From the IMG/VR virus record IMGVR_UViG_3300049846_001037, positions 1 through 64,000 of that record: a stretch of 64,000 nt of DNA; one strand, 5' to 3'. Each line of letters starts with the position of its first letter. Within the stretch, counting starts at the first letter, position 1. Position numbers and translations under genes: made by a program. Shown in pieces: positions 4,448-64,000 of the stretch. Under the pieces are notes generated by a model, which was given only the letters and a program-made list of their open reading frames with translations, was not told where the DNA came from and made no database searches.

Positions 4448-7400
4448 TTAGTTCATGTAAAGCATCAATGATGCTTTGGTGACGTTGGTTGGGGTTGCAT
4501 CAATGTGGAACGTGAGAATGTCGCCAGCCGTTATACCAGACCATGTAGTTATTGATGTATCGGTGTTCTTTGATACTGATGACAATGTTGGTTTCTCTGT
4601 ACCAACAATAGACGAGTTTCCTAGAACCAAGCTGGCTTGAGACCAGTTGGCATAGGTTGTTCTTCTTACGTCTACAGAAAGAGTTCCTGTAACGTCTGCT
4701 ACCAGTACCCACTGATTCAAAGTGCATGTGAATGGAACCGTGACAAAACCTTGTGTTCCAGAGGAAAGAACTGATCCAGCGCCGTCCATGTTGAAGTTGA
4801 TCATTCTCTGGAGAGAACCGGCAGAGCTTCCTGAAATTGTAATGCCCTGACCAGCGGTGCCTGTAGATATTGTGATGATTCCAGCTCCGGCAATTGTGTT
4901 AAAGTTTAAGGAGTTGCCAGTCTTGCTTATGAATAGAGCGGTGCCATTTCCTGAGTTGTTGACGTTTGTCACAACTGCACTGCCAGATAAGTTCAATACG
5001 TTTAGGGCATTGATGGTTGGAGCAACAATAGAGGTTGTTCCAGATATTGTTGAACCAGTGAAGTTGGTGGTATTGAGTGTCGTGATAGTAGCCAACGGAG
5101 ATGTTAGAGAGGTAAGGGCAGTTAAGCTTCCTCCAACTATGGCTGTGGTTCCAGATATATTTGATCCAGTAATGTTGGTTGCATTTATGGTCGTAATGGT
5201 TGCAAGCGGCGATGTTAAGTTAGTAAGGGCTCCAACGGTTCCAGCAACCAAAGATGTGGTTCCAGATATTGTGTTTCCAGTAATATTTGTAGCACTGATA
5301 GTCGTAATAGTGGCCATCGGGCTTGTCATTGATGTTGTATTTGTCAATGTCTGAGCATTAATGGTTGAACCAGAAATGCTTGTTCCAGTCAATGTTGTGA
5401 AAAATGCTCCGTCAGCAGATGTTAACGGACCACTCAAGTTCAGCGCATTGGCATTAAGTGTGGTGCCAGAAATGGTTGTTCCAGTAATGCTCGATGCCGT
5501 CAGCGTAGTTACCGAAGCCAATGGGGTTGTGATTGATGTAAAACCATTGACTGTGGATCCAACGACAGATGTGCCGCTTACTGTTGAACCAATGACACTA
5601 GTAGCATTTACCAATGGTGAGGTAACGGAGGTAAAACCATTGACTGTTCCTGCCACTAAAGCCGTTCCACTGATGTTCGTACCAGTTATGTTCGTAGCAT
5701 TTAGGGTAGTTACAGTAGCCAAAGGAGAGGCTACTGATGTAAAGCCGTTGATGGTGCCAGCTACCAAGGCAGTACCACTTATGTTGGTGCCAGTGATATT
5801 TGTAGCATTGAGAGTTGTTACACTGGCTAATGGTGATGTGACAGAGGTAAAGCTATTGACTGTTCCACCTATGACTGATGCTCCAGTAAAGGTCGTTGCG
5901 CTGAGGGTGGCTACTCCAGCCATGTTTGAAGATGGATCAATGGTGATGGTAGTGTTTAGTAGACCACCACCGCTTGTTCCAGACCAAATTGCAATACCAG
6001 AATTATTGGTGGTTGCTGGAGTCGTTATTGAAGATCCAGGACCAGTTGAGCTGCCTGATATGGTGATCAAATTTGCGTTTGTAGTAATCGTAACACTTCC
6101 TGCACCAGCAAGAGTGTTGAAATTCAAGTCATTGCTAGTCTTTGTTCCAGCAAAAACAGACTGTCCACCGCCGAGGTTACTGCCACTGACGATGACATCA
6201 TTTCCAGACTGCCTGATCACTGTTCCAGTCAAAAGATTGGCTCCAACGGTTGCTCCAAAAACAGACGTAAAGCCGTTGACTGTTCCTGCCACTAGGGTAG
6301 TTCCACTGATGTTAGTTCCAGTTATGTTGGTGGCATTAAGTGTTGTGACCGTGGCTAAAGGAGAGGTGACAGAGGTGAATCCGTTGACGGTTGATCCAAC
6401 AACAGAGGTACCACTTATGGTTGAGCCAATGACGTTGGTGGCATTTACTAGTGGGGAGGTTACGGACGTAAATCCGTTGACAGTTCCAGCAACTAGAGCA
6501 GTTCCACTGATATTCGTGCCAGTGATGTTCGTGGCATTAAGGGTAGTTACAGTAGCCAGTGGCGTGGAGACTGACGTGAATCCATTTACAGTACCTGCAA
6601 CCAGAGCAGTGCCGCTGATATTTGTGCCGGTGATACTCGTAGCATTTAGTGTGGTGACATTGGCTAGGGGTGTAGTAATTGATGTAAAGCCACTGACTGT
6701 GCCTGCAACTAGAGTAGTTCCACTAATGTTAGTACCAGTGATATTGGTAGCATTGAGGGTGGTGACACTTGCTAGGGGCGTAGTAACTGATGTGAAGCCG
6801 TTGACGGTGGATCCAACAACAGAAGTGCCACTTACTGTTGAACCAATGACACTTGTGGCGTTTACCAATGGAGATGTAACGGATGTAAAGCCATTGATAG
6901 TGCCAGCCACCAAGGCCGTGCCGCTTATGTTGGTCCCAGTGATGTTTGTGGCATTCAATGTTGTAGTAGTTGCCAACGGCGTTGATAGAGATGTGAAAGC
7001 GTTGACCGTTCCACCAATGACCGAGTTACCAGTAAAGGTGGTAGCAGAAATGGCTGCTGCCCCATTGATATTAGAATTTGGATCAATGGTGATTGTGGTA
7101 TTGAGTAGTCCTGCTCCCGTGGTGCCAGACCAAACAGCAATGCCTGAGTTGTTGGTTGTTGTAGGGGCTGTGATGGTCGAAGCCGCAACCGAAGAACCAG
7201 AAATAGTCAAAACATTGGCAGTCGAAGAAAGAGAGATGCTTCCGACTCCAGATATTTGCTTAAACTGCAAATTATTCAATGACTTAGAGCTGAAAATTGG
7301 CTCACCAGCGCCAAGATTTGTTGCGTTCACAATGACGGCATTACCAGACAGATTCAACACATTCAAGGCATTGACAGTAGGAGCAGTCAATGAACCAGAT

Positions 7401-7642
7401 ATGGTTGTGCCTGTTAGGCTTGTAAAGCTTGCAGATTGCCCACTAAGTCCAGACTCTATGACTAGGCTTCCGCTAACGTTTCCACCATAGACTGATAGGT
7501 ATGGAAGATTGGTGGCGCTGGATGTTCCGCTAAGGTTGGTCTGTATCTGACCAGAATTTGACAAAGTGACTTCGTATGGCAAGCCATCTTGGCTTGTCAA
7601 GAAGATTTGGGTTCCAGAATCGAATACGTATTGGACTGTCAT
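4448..7642 (-). CDS. Long tail fibre protein, Thr/Ser/Gly-rich repeats
   Basis: 1064 aa with 31- and 36-aa tandem repeats, three N.G.G..F..K....L.F modules, and a C-terminal domain shared with 17606-20368. Confidence 0.75.
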   Translation of the reverse strand: MTVQYVFDSGTQIFLTSQDGLPYEVTLSNSGQIQTNLSGTSSATNLPYLSVYGGNVSGSLVIESGLSGQSASFTSLTGTTISGSLTAPTVNALNVLNLSGNAVIVNATNLGAGEPIFSSKSLNNLQFKQISGVGSISLSSTANVLTISGSSVAASTITAPTTTNNSGIAVWSGTTGAGLLNTTITIDPNSNINGAAAISATTFTGNSVIGGTVNAFTSLSTPLATTTTLNATNITGTNISGTALVAGTINGFTSVTSPLVNATSVIGSTVSGTSVVGSTVNGFTSVTTPLASVTTLNATNITGTNISGTTLVAGTVSGFTSITTPLANVTTLNATSITGTNISGTALVAGTVNGFTSVSTPLATVTTLNATNITGTNISGTALVAGTVNGFTSVTSPLVNATNVIGSTISGTSVVGSTVNGFTSVTSPLATVTTLNATNITGTNISGTTLVAGTVNGFTSVFGATVGANLLTGTVIRQSGNDVIVSGSNLGGGQSVFAGTKTSNDLNFNTLAGAGSVTITTNANLITISGSSTGPGSSITTPATTNNSGIAIWSGTSGGGLLNTTITIDPSSNMAGVATLSATTFTGASVIGGTVNSFTSVTSPLASVTTLNATNITGTNISGTALVAGTINGFTSVASPLATVTTLNATNITGTNISGTALVAGTVNGFTSVTSPLVNATSVIGSTVSGTSVVGSTVNGFTSITTPLASVTTLTASSITGTTISGTTLNANALNLSGPLTSADGAFFTTLTGTSISGSTINAQTLTNTTSMTSPMATITTISATNITGNTISGTTSLVAGTVGALTNLTSPLATITTINATNITGSNISGTTAIVGGSLTALTSLTSPLATITTLNTTNFTGSTISGTTSIVAPTINALNVLNLSGSAVVTNVNNSGNGTALFISKTGNSLNFNTIAGAGIITISTGTAGQGITISGSSAGSLQRMINFNMDGAGSVLSSGTQGFVTVPFTCTLNQWVLVADVTGTLSVDVRRTTYANWSQASLVLGNSSIVGTEKPTLSSVSKNTDTSITTWSGITAGDILTFHIDATPTNVTKASLMLYMN
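5450..7030 (-). repeat. Coding tandem repeats (NGFTSVTSPLATVTTLNATNITGTNISGTALVAGTV and a 31-aa variant), in two blocks
   Basis: Visible in the translation; DNA copies diverge at synonymous sites. Boundaries approximate. Confidence 0.85.
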
Positions 7643-62587: not shown

Positions 62588-63574
62588 TTAGGCAGAGGCG
62601 AGAGTGTACTTGGCAACGCCACGAGCGTTAGCAACGGCGATACCAATGATCTCGTTAACAACCCAGCCCAACTTCAACTGCTTGGGCTCGTCGGCTGGTA
62701 GAACTTCGATGTCCTGACGGATTGGCATTGGGCCAACGAAGTCAGCATCGGCAACAGCGTAAATCGTACGAGCAGGAACAACCTTCGATACGATTACGTC
62801 TGCGGTCCACAAACGGCCGAACAAGCCCGTCTGGAGGACTTCACGCTGAGTAACTGGATCGAACGAGGTCTGATCGAAGGTACGGAAGCCAGCGAAGGTA
62901 CGGATGTTCATGAAGATTCTGGCTGTGATCAAATCCCACTGGTCAACTTCAGAGTACAAGTCGGCCAACTTGTTCTTCTCAAGAACGGTGCCGGTCGTTG
63001 GGGTTCCGGTGACGGCTACGTTCTCCAAGGTCGAAGCGAATTCCAAAGCGGCGAAGATGTTGGCATCTTCCTGAGCCTGGATTTCCTGACGAGCCTTCTG
63101 CTGAGCACGGTCAATGACGTTGAACCTGCGTCTCTTGACTTCTGAGATACGGACGGTTGGGTTTGAAACAACCTCGAACTCAGGAACCGAGATACGGTCG
63201 CCCTTGATTCTGCTCTCTGGTACTGCGCCATTGCTTGAGACAACGATGGCGTTTACGTCGATATCCTTGTCGTAAACGGCCAAAGCGCCCTGAGGAAGTG
63301 GGTCAACACGGAGAGCCTTACGGCCAACTCCCTGGTAGTCCAAGTTCCTACGGATTGGGTTTGCCATTGCCTGAGCGAGAGCGATCTTGCCACGCTCGTT
63401 GGAAAGAGCCTTGATCAAAAGGGCTTCTTTCTCGGCATCTGTTGGCTGAACTTCAGGGTTTGCTTTGCCAGCTTCTGGGTTAGCAAGGGCCTGAGCGTAA
63501 GCCAATAGCTGTTCCAATGAGTCTTTCTTTGTGTAGGCGTTCATTACTCCGCCATTGTTAAACATTGTTGCCAT
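62588..63574 (-). CDS. Major capsid protein (HK97 fold)
   Basis: 328 aa; LAQAMANPIRRNLDYQG, VPEFEVVSNP, QAQED..IF.AL, G.FG.LW...VIVS, LGWVVNEIIG. Strong TAAGGAG RBS, biased codons, followed by a terminator. Confidence 0.9.
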   Translation of the reverse strand: MATMFNNGGVMNAYTKKDSLEQLLAYAQALANPEAGKANPEVQPTDAEKEALLIKALSNERGKIALAQAMANPIRRNLDYQGVGRKALRVDPLPQGALAVYDKDIDVNAIVVSSNGAVPESRIKGDRISVPEFEVVSNPTVRISEVKRRRFNVIDRAQQKARQEIQAQEDANIFAALEFASTLENVAVTGTPTTGTVLEKNKLADLYSEVDQWDLITARIFMNIRTFAGFRTFDQTSFDPVTQREVLQTGLFGRLWTADVIVSKVVPARTIYAVADADFVGPMPIRQDIEVLPADEPKQLKLGWVVNEIIGIAVANARGVAKYTLASA

Positions 63575-63588
63575 TGATTTGTTTCTCC

Positions 63589-63768
63589 TTATTTAATTTT
63601 TTTGACGTAGTTCAATCTAAGCGTCAATGGATTTGTGCAAATAACTTTTGCTTTCTTTTTCTTGATAAGAATACGTGCTTTCCCTGGTCTTACCGGAGTC
63701 AGCTCAATCATATTGCCGTTAAAAACGGGAATAGATTTTTGTTCACTTGCAGGAAAGAAATTAGGCAT
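63589..63768 (-). CDS. Stand-alone PLMP (RRXRR N-terminal)-like domain microprotein
   Basis: GAGGT RBS 8 nt before ATG 63768. IPVFNGNMIELTPVRPGKARILIKKKKAKVICTNPLTLRLNY follows the IscB N-terminal pattern VxVlxxxGxPLMPxxxxxARxLLKxGKAxVxxxxPFTIxLxY. Confidence 0.7.
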   Translation of the reverse strand: MPNFFPASEQKSIPVFNGNMIELTPVRPGKARILIKKKKAKVICTNPLTLRLNYVKKIK

Positions 63769-63810
63769 CTCAGCCAACCTCATCGAACTTTATCTAGATG
63801 GTTATAGCAA

Positions 63811-64000
63811 TTAAGCTACTCTGTATGGGTCGTTCTTTAGGTAGAAATGCAAGAACGGATTGCCAGCCGAAGGTGACTTTGTTACGTAACCAACGACCGT
63901 GAGGCCTGAAGTGCTGGCAGGTGCACCAGCGACTGAAGCCGTCAACTTCGAGTTTGCAGAGCAATACAACGGAGCGCCAACTGTGTAAGCCTGAGCGCCC
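63811..64000 (-). CDS. Capsid decoration/cement protein (3' part only)
   Basis: Hand translation ...AYTVGAPLYCSANSKLT...VVGYVTKSPSAGNPFLHFYL...*; typical of the decoration gene upstream of an MCP. Confidence 0.6.
   Translation of the reverse strand, partial: GAQAYTVGAPLYCSANSKLTASVAGAPASTSGLTVVGYVTKSPSAGNPFLHFYLKNDPYRVA

What the first reader, a model, noticed from the sequence alone, without database searches (positions are those of the whole stretch)
63589..63768. Stand-alone IscB-type PLMP domain encoded between the decoration and major capsid genes
Seen: a 59-aa basic ORF with its own RBS, whose TAA is part of the capsid RBS (TAAGGAG). It follows, almost residue for residue, the N-terminal PLMP domain consensus of IscB/IsrB as I recall it (ELTP for PLMP, then ARILIK..KAKV....PLTL.L.Y). 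It stops where RuvC-I (GIDPG) would begin, and only about 42 nt separate it from the upstream gene, so there is no room for an omega-RNA or transposon ends. Known: PLMP is an RNA-contacting domain of OMEGA nucleases. Inference: a domesticated RNA-binding module in the head operon, possibly a translational regulator of capsid synthesis or a partner for a phage ncRNA. I know of no described capsid-linked stand-alone PLMP.
Basis: partly seen in the sequence, partly recalled or inferred. Interest (0 to 1): 0.85.

Follow-up and report, generated by a model that had tools for sequence, protein, structure and literature searches.

The report
Stand-alone IscB-type PLMP mini-protein before capsid gene
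A clade of uncultivated giant phages keeps a 59-residue protein that is only the N-terminal "PLMP" domain of IscB-type RNA-guided nucleases, wedged before the major capsid gene and preceded by a small conserved RNA hairpin over its own ribosome-binding site. It is a natural minimal system for learning what this poorly understood domain does.

Summary
On the minus strand, 63589-63768 encodes a 59-aa protein (pI 10.6). It lies 42 nt after the putative decoration gene and 14 nt before the major capsid gene.

It is a genuine PLMP domain. Pfam RRXRR scores above its gathering cut-off, the NCBIfam IscB model matches, and a family-only profile hits the PLMP of a solved IscB (E 2e-7). The nine best fold matches are all IscB/IsrB PLMP. 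It has no RuvC, bridge helix or HNH, and no omega-RNA.

It is not a scar. The order decoration gene, mini-ORF, capsid gene holds wherever flanks exist among 38 loci. Carriers form one capsid-tree split (99/94). Non-synonymous change is far below saturated synonymous change, as in the capsid gene.

New here: the 42-nt leader holds a covarying hairpin that occludes the ORF's Shine-Dalgarno sequence. This mirrors the omega-RNA terminal hairpin that PLMP contacts in IsrB.

Best guess, inferred only: a small RNA-hairpin-binding protein that autoregulates its translation and may tune capsid-gene translation.

Stand-alone PLMP minis also occur elsewhere, including in conjugation operons between the pilin gene and traC, so this family is not unique, though I found no published description. 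Function is untested. Interest is moderate to high.

The parts
63589..63768 (-). Stand-alone PLMP mini-protein gene: 59 codons plus TAA, basic (pI 10.6)
   Evidence: ORF listing. Pfam RRXRR 27.4-27.7 bits on profile positions 1-42/174. NCBIfam guided_IscB positions 3-44. Family profile against PDB IscB PLMP, E 2e-7. AF2 model pLDDT 87.7, and the top 9 Foldseek PDB hits are all IscB/IsrB PLMP. pN 0.09-0.38 against pS 0.63-0.99.
63776..63803 (-). Leader hairpin occluding the mini-ORF's Shine-Dalgarno. 5' arm A-ACC-ATC (63803-63797), 12-nt loop, 3' arm GAT (63784-63782), bulged GA (63781-63780), then GGT-T (63779-63776). The SD GAGG is 63781-63778.
   Evidence: Compensatory arm variants ATC/GAT, GTC/GAC, ACT/AGT, GTT/AAC and ATT/AAT across 28 leaders. 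97.6% of cells paired, 2 of 5 scored pairs changed on both sides, slid controls 20-41% paired. It is the only such hairpin in the window. The MFE of the single sequence is unremarkable (z -0.88), so the support comes from covariation, not energy.
63769..63777 (-). Nearly invariant spacer (T)TGGCTGAG between SD and ATG
   Evidence: Invariant or nearly invariant columns in 28 leaders, although synonymous sites of the ORF are saturated. The motif is unique in the window. No consistent long-range pairing partner was found. It remains unexplained.
63575..63588 (-). 14-nt junction carrying the capsid gene's GGAG ribosome-binding site, directly after the mini-ORF's TAA
   Evidence: Sequence. In relatives the junction varies: TAAATG, ATGA overlap, a 17-nt overlap, and 7, 13, 20 or 73 nt.
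62588..63574 (-). Major capsid protein gene (328 aa)
   Evidence: PHROG 2522 major head protein, E 8.5e-75, and Pfam Phage_capsid just under its cut-off. DNA similarity to the Bacillus phage G major head protein gp27.
63811..64000 (-). 3' end of the upstream 227-aa gene (putative decoration protein). It continues beyond the window end.
   Evidence: Full ORF seen in L002 3081-3764. Similarity to the phage G decoration protein gp26 is weak (pairwise E 2e-4), so the 'decoration' label is tentative. The position matches gp26 before gp27 in phage G.

Best explanation
Shown: The ORF is a real, vertically inherited gene for a free-standing PLMP domain. PLMP is the N-terminal, IF3-N-like domain of IscB/IsrB OMEGA nucleases. 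The gene entered once between the decoration-like gene and the major capsid gene in the ancestor of a clade of phage-G-related jumbo phages from sediment and soil. It has been kept under purifying selection about as strong as that on the capsid gene. It has lost everything that makes IscB a nuclease: RuvC, bridge helix, HNH and omega-RNA. Its own ribosome-binding site sits in a small hairpin whose stem covaries.

Inferred: The protein still does what PLMP does in IsrB, namely clamp the base of an RNA hairpin that carries a Shine-Dalgarno sequence. By binding its own leader hairpin it would repress its own translation and hold itself at a low set level. The gene abuts or overlaps the capsid start (14 nt, TAAATG, ATGA, 17-nt overlap). 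Ribosome traffic through it, or the protein itself, may therefore also tune capsid-gene translation relative to the upstream head genes.
For: Identity:
- Pfam, NCBIfam and PDB-profile matches.
- All 133 proteins aligned from the representative search, the window ORF and 132 of its hits, are RRXRR. The nearest full-length ones are IscB with HNH and with HEARO RNA upstream.
- The AF2 model has pLDDT 87.7. The Foldseek top 9 are all IscB/IsrB PLMP (TM 0.68-0.74, rmsd 0.8-2.2 A), followed by IF3-N at TM about 0.47.

Real gene:
- pN 0.09-0.38 against pS 0.63-0.99, giving dN/dS about 0.07-0.26 where it can be calculated. The capsid gene gives 0.06-0.16.
- 37 homologs of 41-74 aa share invariant K-A-R and K-A-K and a nearly invariant RLNYVK.

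Single old insertion:
- The gene order holds wherever flanks are present among 38 loci.
- The 22 distinct carriers form one split of the capsid tree (99/94), needing one change.
- Outgroups and phage G have the two head genes 9-25 nt apart.

RNA element:
- A covarying SD-occluding hairpin.
- It is the only one of its kind in the window.

Precedent:
- In IsrB the PLMP domain stabilises the base of the omega-RNA terminal hairpin and contacts the SD just upstream of the isrB start. The authors suggest this autoregulates expression (PMC9581776).
- In IscB, PLMP binds the terminal hairpins mainly in a sequence-independent way (PMC9640706).

Circumstantial:
- Two stand-alone PLMP genes in conjugation operons also have stable hairpins over their start sites (z -3.5 and -2.5).
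Against: - No binding, expression or phenotype data exist. RNA binding by an isolated PLMP has never been shown. In IscB and IsrB the domain is buttressed by RuvC and TI.
- The PLMP motif itself is altered (ELTP/ELSP).
- The hairpin is short, 6-7 bp with a bulge. It is thermodynamically unremarkable in a single sequence (z -0.88). SD-occluding hairpins are common and need no dedicated protein.
- No second copy of the hairpin was found in the 64-kb window, so no regulon is visible.
- The junction with the capsid gene is not conserved in form (0 to 73 nt, or overlapping). That argues against one fixed coupling mechanism.
- The confident AF2 model used an alignment that included IscB PLMP segments. 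The family-only alignment gave pLDDT 59.7.
- Other stand-alone PLMP genes lack leader hairpins.
Confidence: 0.4

Rival explanations
1. Structural or assembly role. The small basic protein is a virion or procapsid component encoded in the head module. It could be a cement or chaperone for the capsid or decoration protein, or an internal nucleic-acid-condensing protein packaged with the DNA.
For: The position between the decoration-like and capsid genes is invariant wherever flanks exist among 38 loci. The gene lies inside one long minus-strand structural operon with no nearby promoter or terminator. It is tightly coupled to the capsid start. It is very basic. In conjugation operons the analogous minis also sit beside the major structural subunit gene, the pilin.
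Against: Phage G and all sampled sister lineages build related capsids without it. No PHROG structural family matches. The only documented activities of the fold are RNA-hairpin contact and support of RuvC (PMC9581776, PMC9640706). An SD-occluding hairpin implies low or regulated synthesis, which is unusual for a stoichiometric capsid component.
Confidence: 0.25
2. Trans-acting subunit of a split nuclease. The PLMP domain is supplied in trans to a PLMP-less RuvC and/or HNH protein encoded elsewhere in the roughly 205-kb genome, such as a packaging-associated HNH or a homing endonuclease.
For: PLMP normally works in contact with RuvC-I (PMC9581776). PLMP+HNH proteins (IshB) exist (PMC10734217). 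These phages carry homing endonucleases, with LAGLIDADG insertions in the capsid gene of some relatives.
Against: No RRXRR/RuvC-like ORF occurs in the 64-kb window or in any of the 80 capsid loci. The PLMP motif that contacts RuvC is degenerate (ELTP/ELSP). Linkage is to the capsid gene, not to any nuclease gene. Only 67.5 kb of the 205-kb contig could be inspected, so this rival is not excluded.
Confidence: 0.1
3. Decoy or inhibitor. A free PLMP competes for the terminal hairpins of host or rival-element omega-RNA or tracrRNA-like guides. It thereby blunts IscB/IsrB-type nucleases or related guide-dependent systems.
For: It is homologous to the RNA-contacting domain of OMEGA nucleases. Phages often deploy fragments of host machinery as inhibitors (general knowledge).
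Against: IscB is not an established anti-phage system. PADLOC gives no hit. A late structural operon is an odd place for a counter-defence gene, which is usually expressed early. The conserved cis hairpin points to a self-directed RNA target.
Confidence: 0.07
4. Non-functional remnant of an IscB/IS or HNH homing-endonuclease insertion, or an upstream ORF whose translation matters only in cis for capsid translation while the peptide is irrelevant.
For: The ORF corresponds exactly to the 5' end of an iscB gene. It is AT-richer than its neighbours (GC 0.32-0.42 against 0.46-0.53). The capsid gene region attracts mobile endonucleases.
Against: Amino-acid sequence is strongly conserved while synonymous sites are saturated. 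ORF length and frame are kept in every locus where the ORF is complete, across decoration-protein divergence down to 50% identity. No locus shows a decayed RuvC or HNH tail. The low GC is largely explained by Lys, Asn and Ile richness.
Confidence: 0.04

Closest known systems
PLMP domain of IscB / IsrB OMEGA RNA-guided nucleases (PDB 9k30, 7xht/8csz, 7utn, 8dmb)
   Same: The two are homologous in sequence (family profile E 2e-7) and in predicted fold (TM 0.68-0.74). They share the same core, beta strands plus one helix, with K-A-R..L..K-A-K-V..P.T..L.Y. A hairpin carrying the SD lies immediately upstream of the coding start, as with omega-RNA SL7 in IsrB.
   Different: The protein ends before RuvC-I. 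It has no bridge helix, HNH, WED or TI domain and no omega-RNA or HEARO. It shows no transposon context and is fixed in a phage head operon. The PLMP motif reads ELTP/ELSP. A family-specific invariant RLNYVK tail is present.
IshB (PLMP + HNH, about 180 aa; PMC10734217)
   Same: It is a reduced architecture that keeps PLMP without RuvC, showing that PLMP can function away from RuvC.
   Different: IshB keeps a nuclease domain. This protein has none.
[quoted passage not shown]
   Same: Hirano et al. reported this fold class as the remote homolog of PLMP (PMC9581776). It is the next-best structural match after IscB/IsrB. It is a small alpha/beta RNA-machinery domain acting at translation start sites.
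   Different: The structural match is weak (TM 0.46-0.49, probability 0.35-0.63). There is no sequence-profile match to the IF3_N family. There is no IF3 C-terminal domain.
Phage translational operator systems: MS2 coat protein with the replicase start hairpin, and T4 RegA or gp32 autoregulation (general knowledge)
   Same: This is a works-like analogy. A small phage protein binds an RNA element at a ribosome-binding site to set translation levels, including its own.
   Different: There is no homology, and binding is not demonstrated here.
Other stand-alone PLMP mini-proteins (database entries named 'RRXRR domain-containing protein')
   Same: They share the 50-75 aa, PLMP-only architecture. 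They occur in phage-like contigs and in conjugative operons, for example TraV, pilin, PLMP mini, TraC.
   Different: They form different sequence families (at most about 45% identity) in different operons. None that I sampled lies beside a capsid gene. The library searched holds no publication on them.

Membership tests
IscB / IsrB OMEGA nuclease | N-terminal PLMP domain | tested here: met
   Pfam RRXRR positions 1-42. NCBIfam guided_IscB positions 3-44. PDB profile hit on IscB PLMP, E 2e-7. Foldseek top 9 are IscB/IsrB PLMP.
IscB / IsrB OMEGA nuclease | Split RuvC nuclease domain with catalytic Asp/Glu/His/Asp | tested here: not met
   The ORF stops 5 residues after the last PLMP strand. Full-length relatives continue into G-x-D-x-G. 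No RRXRR-like ORF occurs elsewhere in the window or in the 80 capsid loci.
IscB / IsrB OMEGA nuclease | Arg-rich bridge helix (the RRXRR motif itself) | tested here: not met
   Only profile positions 1-42 of 174 are matched.
IscB / IsrB OMEGA nuclease | HNH domain (IscB, IshB) | tested here: not met
   No HNH Pfam hit for the ORF. 13 of the 132 relatives aligned in A2 do have one.
IscB / IsrB OMEGA nuclease | Cognate omega-RNA (HEARO, RF02033) upstream of the gene | tested here: not met
   No Rfam hit in the window at gathering threshold or in L002 at E up to 0.1. The leader is only 42 nt. Positive controls: HEARO at 85.3 bits upstream of P0062 and 49.9 bits upstream of P0043.
IscB / IsrB OMEGA nuclease | IS200/IS605-type mobile context (TnpA, transposon ends, patchy distribution) | tested here: not met
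   Position is fixed wherever flanks exist among 38 loci, and carriers form a single split on the capsid tree. Transposon ends were not searched for specifically.
Pfam PF14239 (RRXRR) | Score at or above the gathering cut-off | tested here: met
   27.4 and 27.7 bits against a cut-off of 25. This is a partial match to the first quarter of the model, so membership is formal only.
IF3 N-terminal domain (IF3_N) | Sequence-profile match and the same fold | tested here: inconclusive
   No Pfam IF3_N hit at E up to 10. Fold matches are at TM 0.46-0.49 with probability 0.35-0.63. Remote homology is claimed in PMC9581776.
Decayed homing-endonuclease or IS remnant (pseudogene) | Relaxed selection, variable truncation, sporadic presence | tested here: not met
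   dN/dS is about 0.07-0.26 with saturated dS. The ORF is intact in every locus where it is not cut by a contig end. Presence needs only one change on the tree.
Autoregulatory RNA-binding translational repressor | Operator structure at its own ribosome-binding site | tested here: met
   A covarying hairpin occludes GAGG.
Autoregulatory RNA-binding translational repressor | Protein binds that operator and represses translation | not testable with these tools
   Needs EMSA or reporter assays.

The most novel reading that the evidence does not exclude
Stand-alone PLMP mini-proteins are a widespread, undescribed class of RNA-hairpin and Shine-Dalgarno binding regulators in mobile elements. They sit beside the gene of the major structural subunit, the capsid protein in these phages and the pilin in F-type conjugation operons. 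There they set translation stoichiometry through a cis hairpin. They may represent the free-living form of the module that RuvC nucleases recruited when IsrB and IscB became omega-RNA-dependent. That would make the origin and function of PLMP directly testable in a 59-residue protein plus a 28-nt RNA.
Probability: 0.15. Interest if true: 0.8.

Novelty: new variant of a known kind. Interest (0 to 1): 0.6.

Why it matters
The function of PLMP in OMEGA nucleases, the ancestors of Cas9, is still called unclear (PMC10734217). [quoted passage not shown]

Here nature has isolated the domain. It is 59 residues, under strong selection, with a covarying SD hairpin next to it. It has no nuclease and no 200-300-nt omega-RNA to complicate experiments. 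If it binds that hairpin, this gives a minimal model for PLMP-RNA recognition. It would also be a new type of phage late-gene translational control and a possible small orthogonal RNA-protein pair.

The finding also shows that pieces of RNA-guided nucleases can be exapted into virion-gene operons of giant phages, and apparently into conjugation operons.

Tried and rejected
- tblastn of the mini-protein against 50,697 GenBank phage records gave no match, so no cultured phage carries it.
- PADLOC gave no hit. The only PHROG hit was a marginal one to an HNH family's N-terminus (E 0.075).
- Representative bacterial and archaeal genomes (GTDB) hold no relative, so this is not a prophage gene in that set.
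- An exact-pattern scan of IMG/VR for the leader motif returned almost only chance matches and added no new family members.
- A long-range pairing partner for the invariant GGCTGAG spacer was not found consistently.
- Further copies of the hairpin type in the window: none.
- The family-only AF2 model was too poor to use (pLDDT 59.7).
- The BFVD fold search gave only unnamed viral proteins of about 160 aa and giant-virus exonuclease N-termini, which is not informative.
- Metatranscriptome evidence is a single 190-nt contig and cannot show transcription boundaries.
- The idea that the leader hairpin is a sequence-level vestige of an omega-RNA terminal hairpin could not be supported. The termini upstream of the two IscB relatives look different. 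It stands as a functional analogy only.
- In-frame read-through from the mini-ORF into the capsid gene is ruled out. The TAA plus the 14-nt junction makes 17 nt, which puts the two genes in different frames.

Full report
**What is there**

The feature lies on the minus strand. An ORF runs from ATG 63768 to TAA 63591-63589 and encodes MPNFFPASEQKSIPVFNGNMIELTPVRPGKARILIKKKKAKVICTNPLTLRLNYVKKIK. It has 59 aa, pI 10.6, and 13 basic against 2 acidic residues.

It follows a 227-aa gene whose stop is at 63811, leaving a 42-nt spacer. The major capsid gene (62588-63574) begins 14 nt after its TAA, and that TAA is followed directly by GGAG. The capsid protein matches PHROG 2522 (E 8.5e-75) and is related to Bacillus phage G gp27.

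The upstream protein resembles the phage G decoration protein gp26 only weakly (E 2e-4). It does occupy the same position, and upstream of it lies a 687-aa Ala/Glu-rich gene.

The window equals bases 1-64000 of a 205-kb IMG/VR contig from freshwater sediment. It is essentially one long minus-strand structural operon. No sigma-70-like promoter or terminator lies near the mini-ORF.

**Is it a PLMP domain?**

Yes.
- Pfam RRXRR (PF14239) scores 27.4-27.7 bits against a cut-off of 25. The match covers profile positions 1-42 of 174, which is the part preceding RuvC-I.
- The NCBIfam 'RNA-guided endonuclease IscB' model matches positions 3-44.
- A profile built only from the mini-protein family hits the PLMP domain of TbaIscB (9k30) at E 2e-7 and five other IscB sequences at about 0.003-0.005.
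- An exhaustive HMMER search of 1.84 billion representatives found four clusters of the family itself, then a score gap (88 to 50 bits), then 130 further proteins. All of the hits aligned and scanned are Pfam RRXRR proteins.
- The nearest full-length hits are RRXRR+HNH proteins of 415-518 aa.
- Two full-length relatives were inspected in their contigs, and both have HEARO/omega-RNA matches just upstream (85.3 and 49.9 bits). They are canonical IscB loci.
- An AF2 model from the family-only alignment was poor (pLDDT 59.7).
- With 129 sequences, including PLMP segments of full-length proteins, the model reached pLDDT 87.7, above 90 for residues 11-59.
- Foldseek against the PDB returned nine IscB/IsrB chains as the top nine hits (TM 0.68-0.74, rmsd 0.8-2.2 A). 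IF3 N-terminal domains followed at TM 0.46-0.49. This echoes the published PLMP/IF3-N relationship (PMC9581776).
- Caveat: the better alignment biases the model towards PLMP. The sequence statistics stand independently.

**What it lacks**

There is no RuvC, bridge helix or HNH. No other RRXRR-type ORF occurs in the window or in the 80 capsid loci. Rfam gives no match in the window or in L002. The window has no tRNA genes. It is therefore not an IscB, IsrB or IshB, only their N-terminal domain.

The eponymous motif is altered to ELTP/ELSP. The K-A-R and K-A-K basic pairs are invariant, and a family-specific RLNYVK is nearly invariant.

**Is it a scar?**

No.
- The large protein database holds 37 homologs of 41-74 aa.
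- In 38 loci from IMG/VR, JGI metagenomes, Logan assemblies and one NCBI assembly, the gene order is always decoration-like gene, mini-ORF, capsid gene wherever flanks exist. Meanwhile the decoration-like protein diverges to 50% identity and the capsid protein to 70%.
- In seven loci, pairwise pN is 0.09-0.38 while pS is 0.63-0.99, which is saturated. That gives dN/dS of 0.07-0.26 where it can be calculated. The capsid gene gives 0.06-0.16 on the same loci.
- On a maximum-likelihood capsid tree of 75 distinct sequences, the 22 carriers form one split (UFboot/SH-aLRT 99/94). That requires a single change.
- Phage G and those sister-lineage loci that have a decoration homolog directly upstream show the two head genes 9-25 nt apart.
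- The simplest history is one insertion of about 220-260 nt, leader plus ORF, followed by long retention.
- Caveat: a few 'non-carrier' loci have little upstream flank.

The 42-nt leader is not featureless. Across 28 distinct leaders there is a hairpin: 5'-(A/C)ACC-NNN, a loop that is mostly 4-12 nt, N'N'N'-GA-GGT(T/G)-3'. The inner three pairs change in a compensatory way: ATC/GAT, GTC/GAC, ACT/AGT, GTT/AAC, ATT/AAT.

On a MAFFT alignment, the five unambiguously aligned pairs are paired in 97.6% of cells. Two pairs show double changes (A-U to G-C in 5 sequences, U-A to C-G in 2). Controls with the partner slid by 1-3 columns pair in only 20-41% of cells.

The 3' arm is the Shine-Dalgarno GAGG(T) of the mini-ORF (window 63781-63777), so the hairpin occludes the ribosome-binding site.

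The single-sequence folding energy is unremarkable (-9 kcal/mol, z -0.88), so the evidence is covariation, not stability.

The spacer (T)GGCTGAG(A) between the SD and the ATG is almost invariant and unexplained. The hairpin type and the motif are each unique in the window.

**Junction with the capsid gene**

The junction is always tight but differs in form:
- 14 nt with GGAG in the window.
- 20 nt, 13 nt and 7 nt in three other loci.
- TAAATG.
- ATGA overlap.
- A 17-nt overlap.
- One case of 73 nt.

C-terminal tails vary. A 1-nt deletion variant at 63597, seen in other samples, extends the ORF through the capsid ribosome-binding site.

**Mechanism (inferred)**

Structural work on IsrB shows that PLMP contacts the 3'-terminal hairpins of the omega-RNA. 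[quoted passage not shown] The authors suggest this regulates IsrB expression (PMC9581776). In IscB, PLMP recognises the terminal hairpins mainly in a sequence-independent way (PMC9640706).

The phage element reproduces that local geometry in miniature: an SD-bearing hairpin, then a PLMP coding sequence. I therefore favour a small RNA-hairpin-binding protein that feeds back on its own translation, with possible effects on capsid-gene translation through the tight junction.

I put this at about 0.4. The identity and 'real gene' parts are near certain, and the RNA-binding and regulatory parts are untested. The rivals are:
- a virion or assembly role (0.25);
- a trans subunit for a PLMP-less nuclease encoded elsewhere, given that only about 67.5 of 205 kb could be inspected (0.1);
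- a decoy against guide-RNA systems (0.07);
- a functionless remnant or a cis-only upstream ORF (0.04, contradicted by dN/dS).

**Wider context**

Stand-alone PLMPs are not confined to this locus.
- ESM Atlas returned 65 hits whose clusters carry only the RRXRR family. The three shown are 61-72 aa, and two of them are commonest in Uroviricota.
- Sampling more distant short hits showed complete small genes in two contigs of uncertain origin, one carrying a Cpn10 gene.
- They also occur in conjugative elements. Twice independently the order is TraV, TrbC/VirB2 pilin, PLMP mini, TraC. A TrbL/CagX/ArdC element carries two copies.
- Tandem double and triple PLMP proteins exist, as do PLMP fused to unknown C-terminal regions.
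- Two of the conjugation-linked genes have stable hairpins over their start codons (z -3.5 and -2.5), while four others do not.
- Full-text searches found no paper describing stand-alone PLMP proteins. Reviews still call PLMP's function unclear (PMC10734217).

**Verdict**

This is a new variant of a known kind: a known domain in a new, free-standing and domesticated form, with an associated cis RNA element. Interest is 0.6.

Noticed in passing
L009 2570-3450; L084 6434-7336; L085 3476-4357; probably L220: In some clade members the major capsid gene is split after residue 71 by an insertion of about 0.9 kb. The insertion carries a 214-aa LAGLIDADG homing endonuclease ORF and is probably a group I intron. 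L084 has a second LAGLIDADG match inside the 702-aa gene downstream of the capsid gene. The mini-ORF is present with or without the insertion.
   Followed up: partly
window 63588-63778: A soil metatranscriptome run (X16) holds a single 190-nt contig that covers exactly the mini-ORF plus 10 nt of leader. It has 1 mismatch and a 1-nt deletion at 63597. Nothing in that run lies on the capsid gene. This may hint at a discrete or abundant RNA, but it is one low-depth contig, and DNA carry-over cannot be excluded.
   Followed up: partly
L090 5001-5189; L237 1582-1773; L235 4001-4192 and 8020-8181: Unrelated-in-detail stand-alone PLMP mini-genes occur in conjugative-transfer operons. Twice the order is TraV, TrbC/VirB2 pilin, PLMP mini, TraC ATPase, and one of these minis overlaps the traC start. 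A TrbL/CagX/ArdC element carries two copies. As in the phage, the mini sits beside the major structural subunit gene.
   Followed up: partly
window 63769-63777 (minus strand) and the homologous positions in 28 loci: The spacer (T)GGCTGAG(A) between the Shine-Dalgarno and the start codon is nearly invariant, although synonymous sites in the ORF are saturated. No pairing partner was found. It could be a protein-binding site.
   Followed up: partly
proteins P0051, P0122, P0046, P0056: PLMP occurs in other unusual architectures: three tandem repeats (191 aa), two tandem repeats (103 aa), and a single PLMP fused to C-terminal regions of about 240 aa with no Pfam match.
   Followed up: no
window 63597: A 1-nt deletion variant is present in a wetland DNA run and in the soil RNA run. 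It shifts the last codons so that the mini-ORF reads through the capsid ribosome-binding site (tail ...KKINKEN, as in homolog P0001). C-terminal tails of the family are generally variable (0-20 extra residues).
   Followed up: partly
window 1-64000: Nearly all ORFs of 180 aa or more lie on the minus strand in one uninterrupted array, including giants of 1964, 1721, 1145, 1064, 1049 and 1020 aa. PHROG searches of five ORFs downstream of the capsid gene and three upstream (the latter read from L002) gave no family. No tRNA genes and no Rfam matches occur in the window. The long plus-strand ORF 5361-7490 lies inside the 1064-aa minus-strand ORF and is probably spurious.
   Followed up: no
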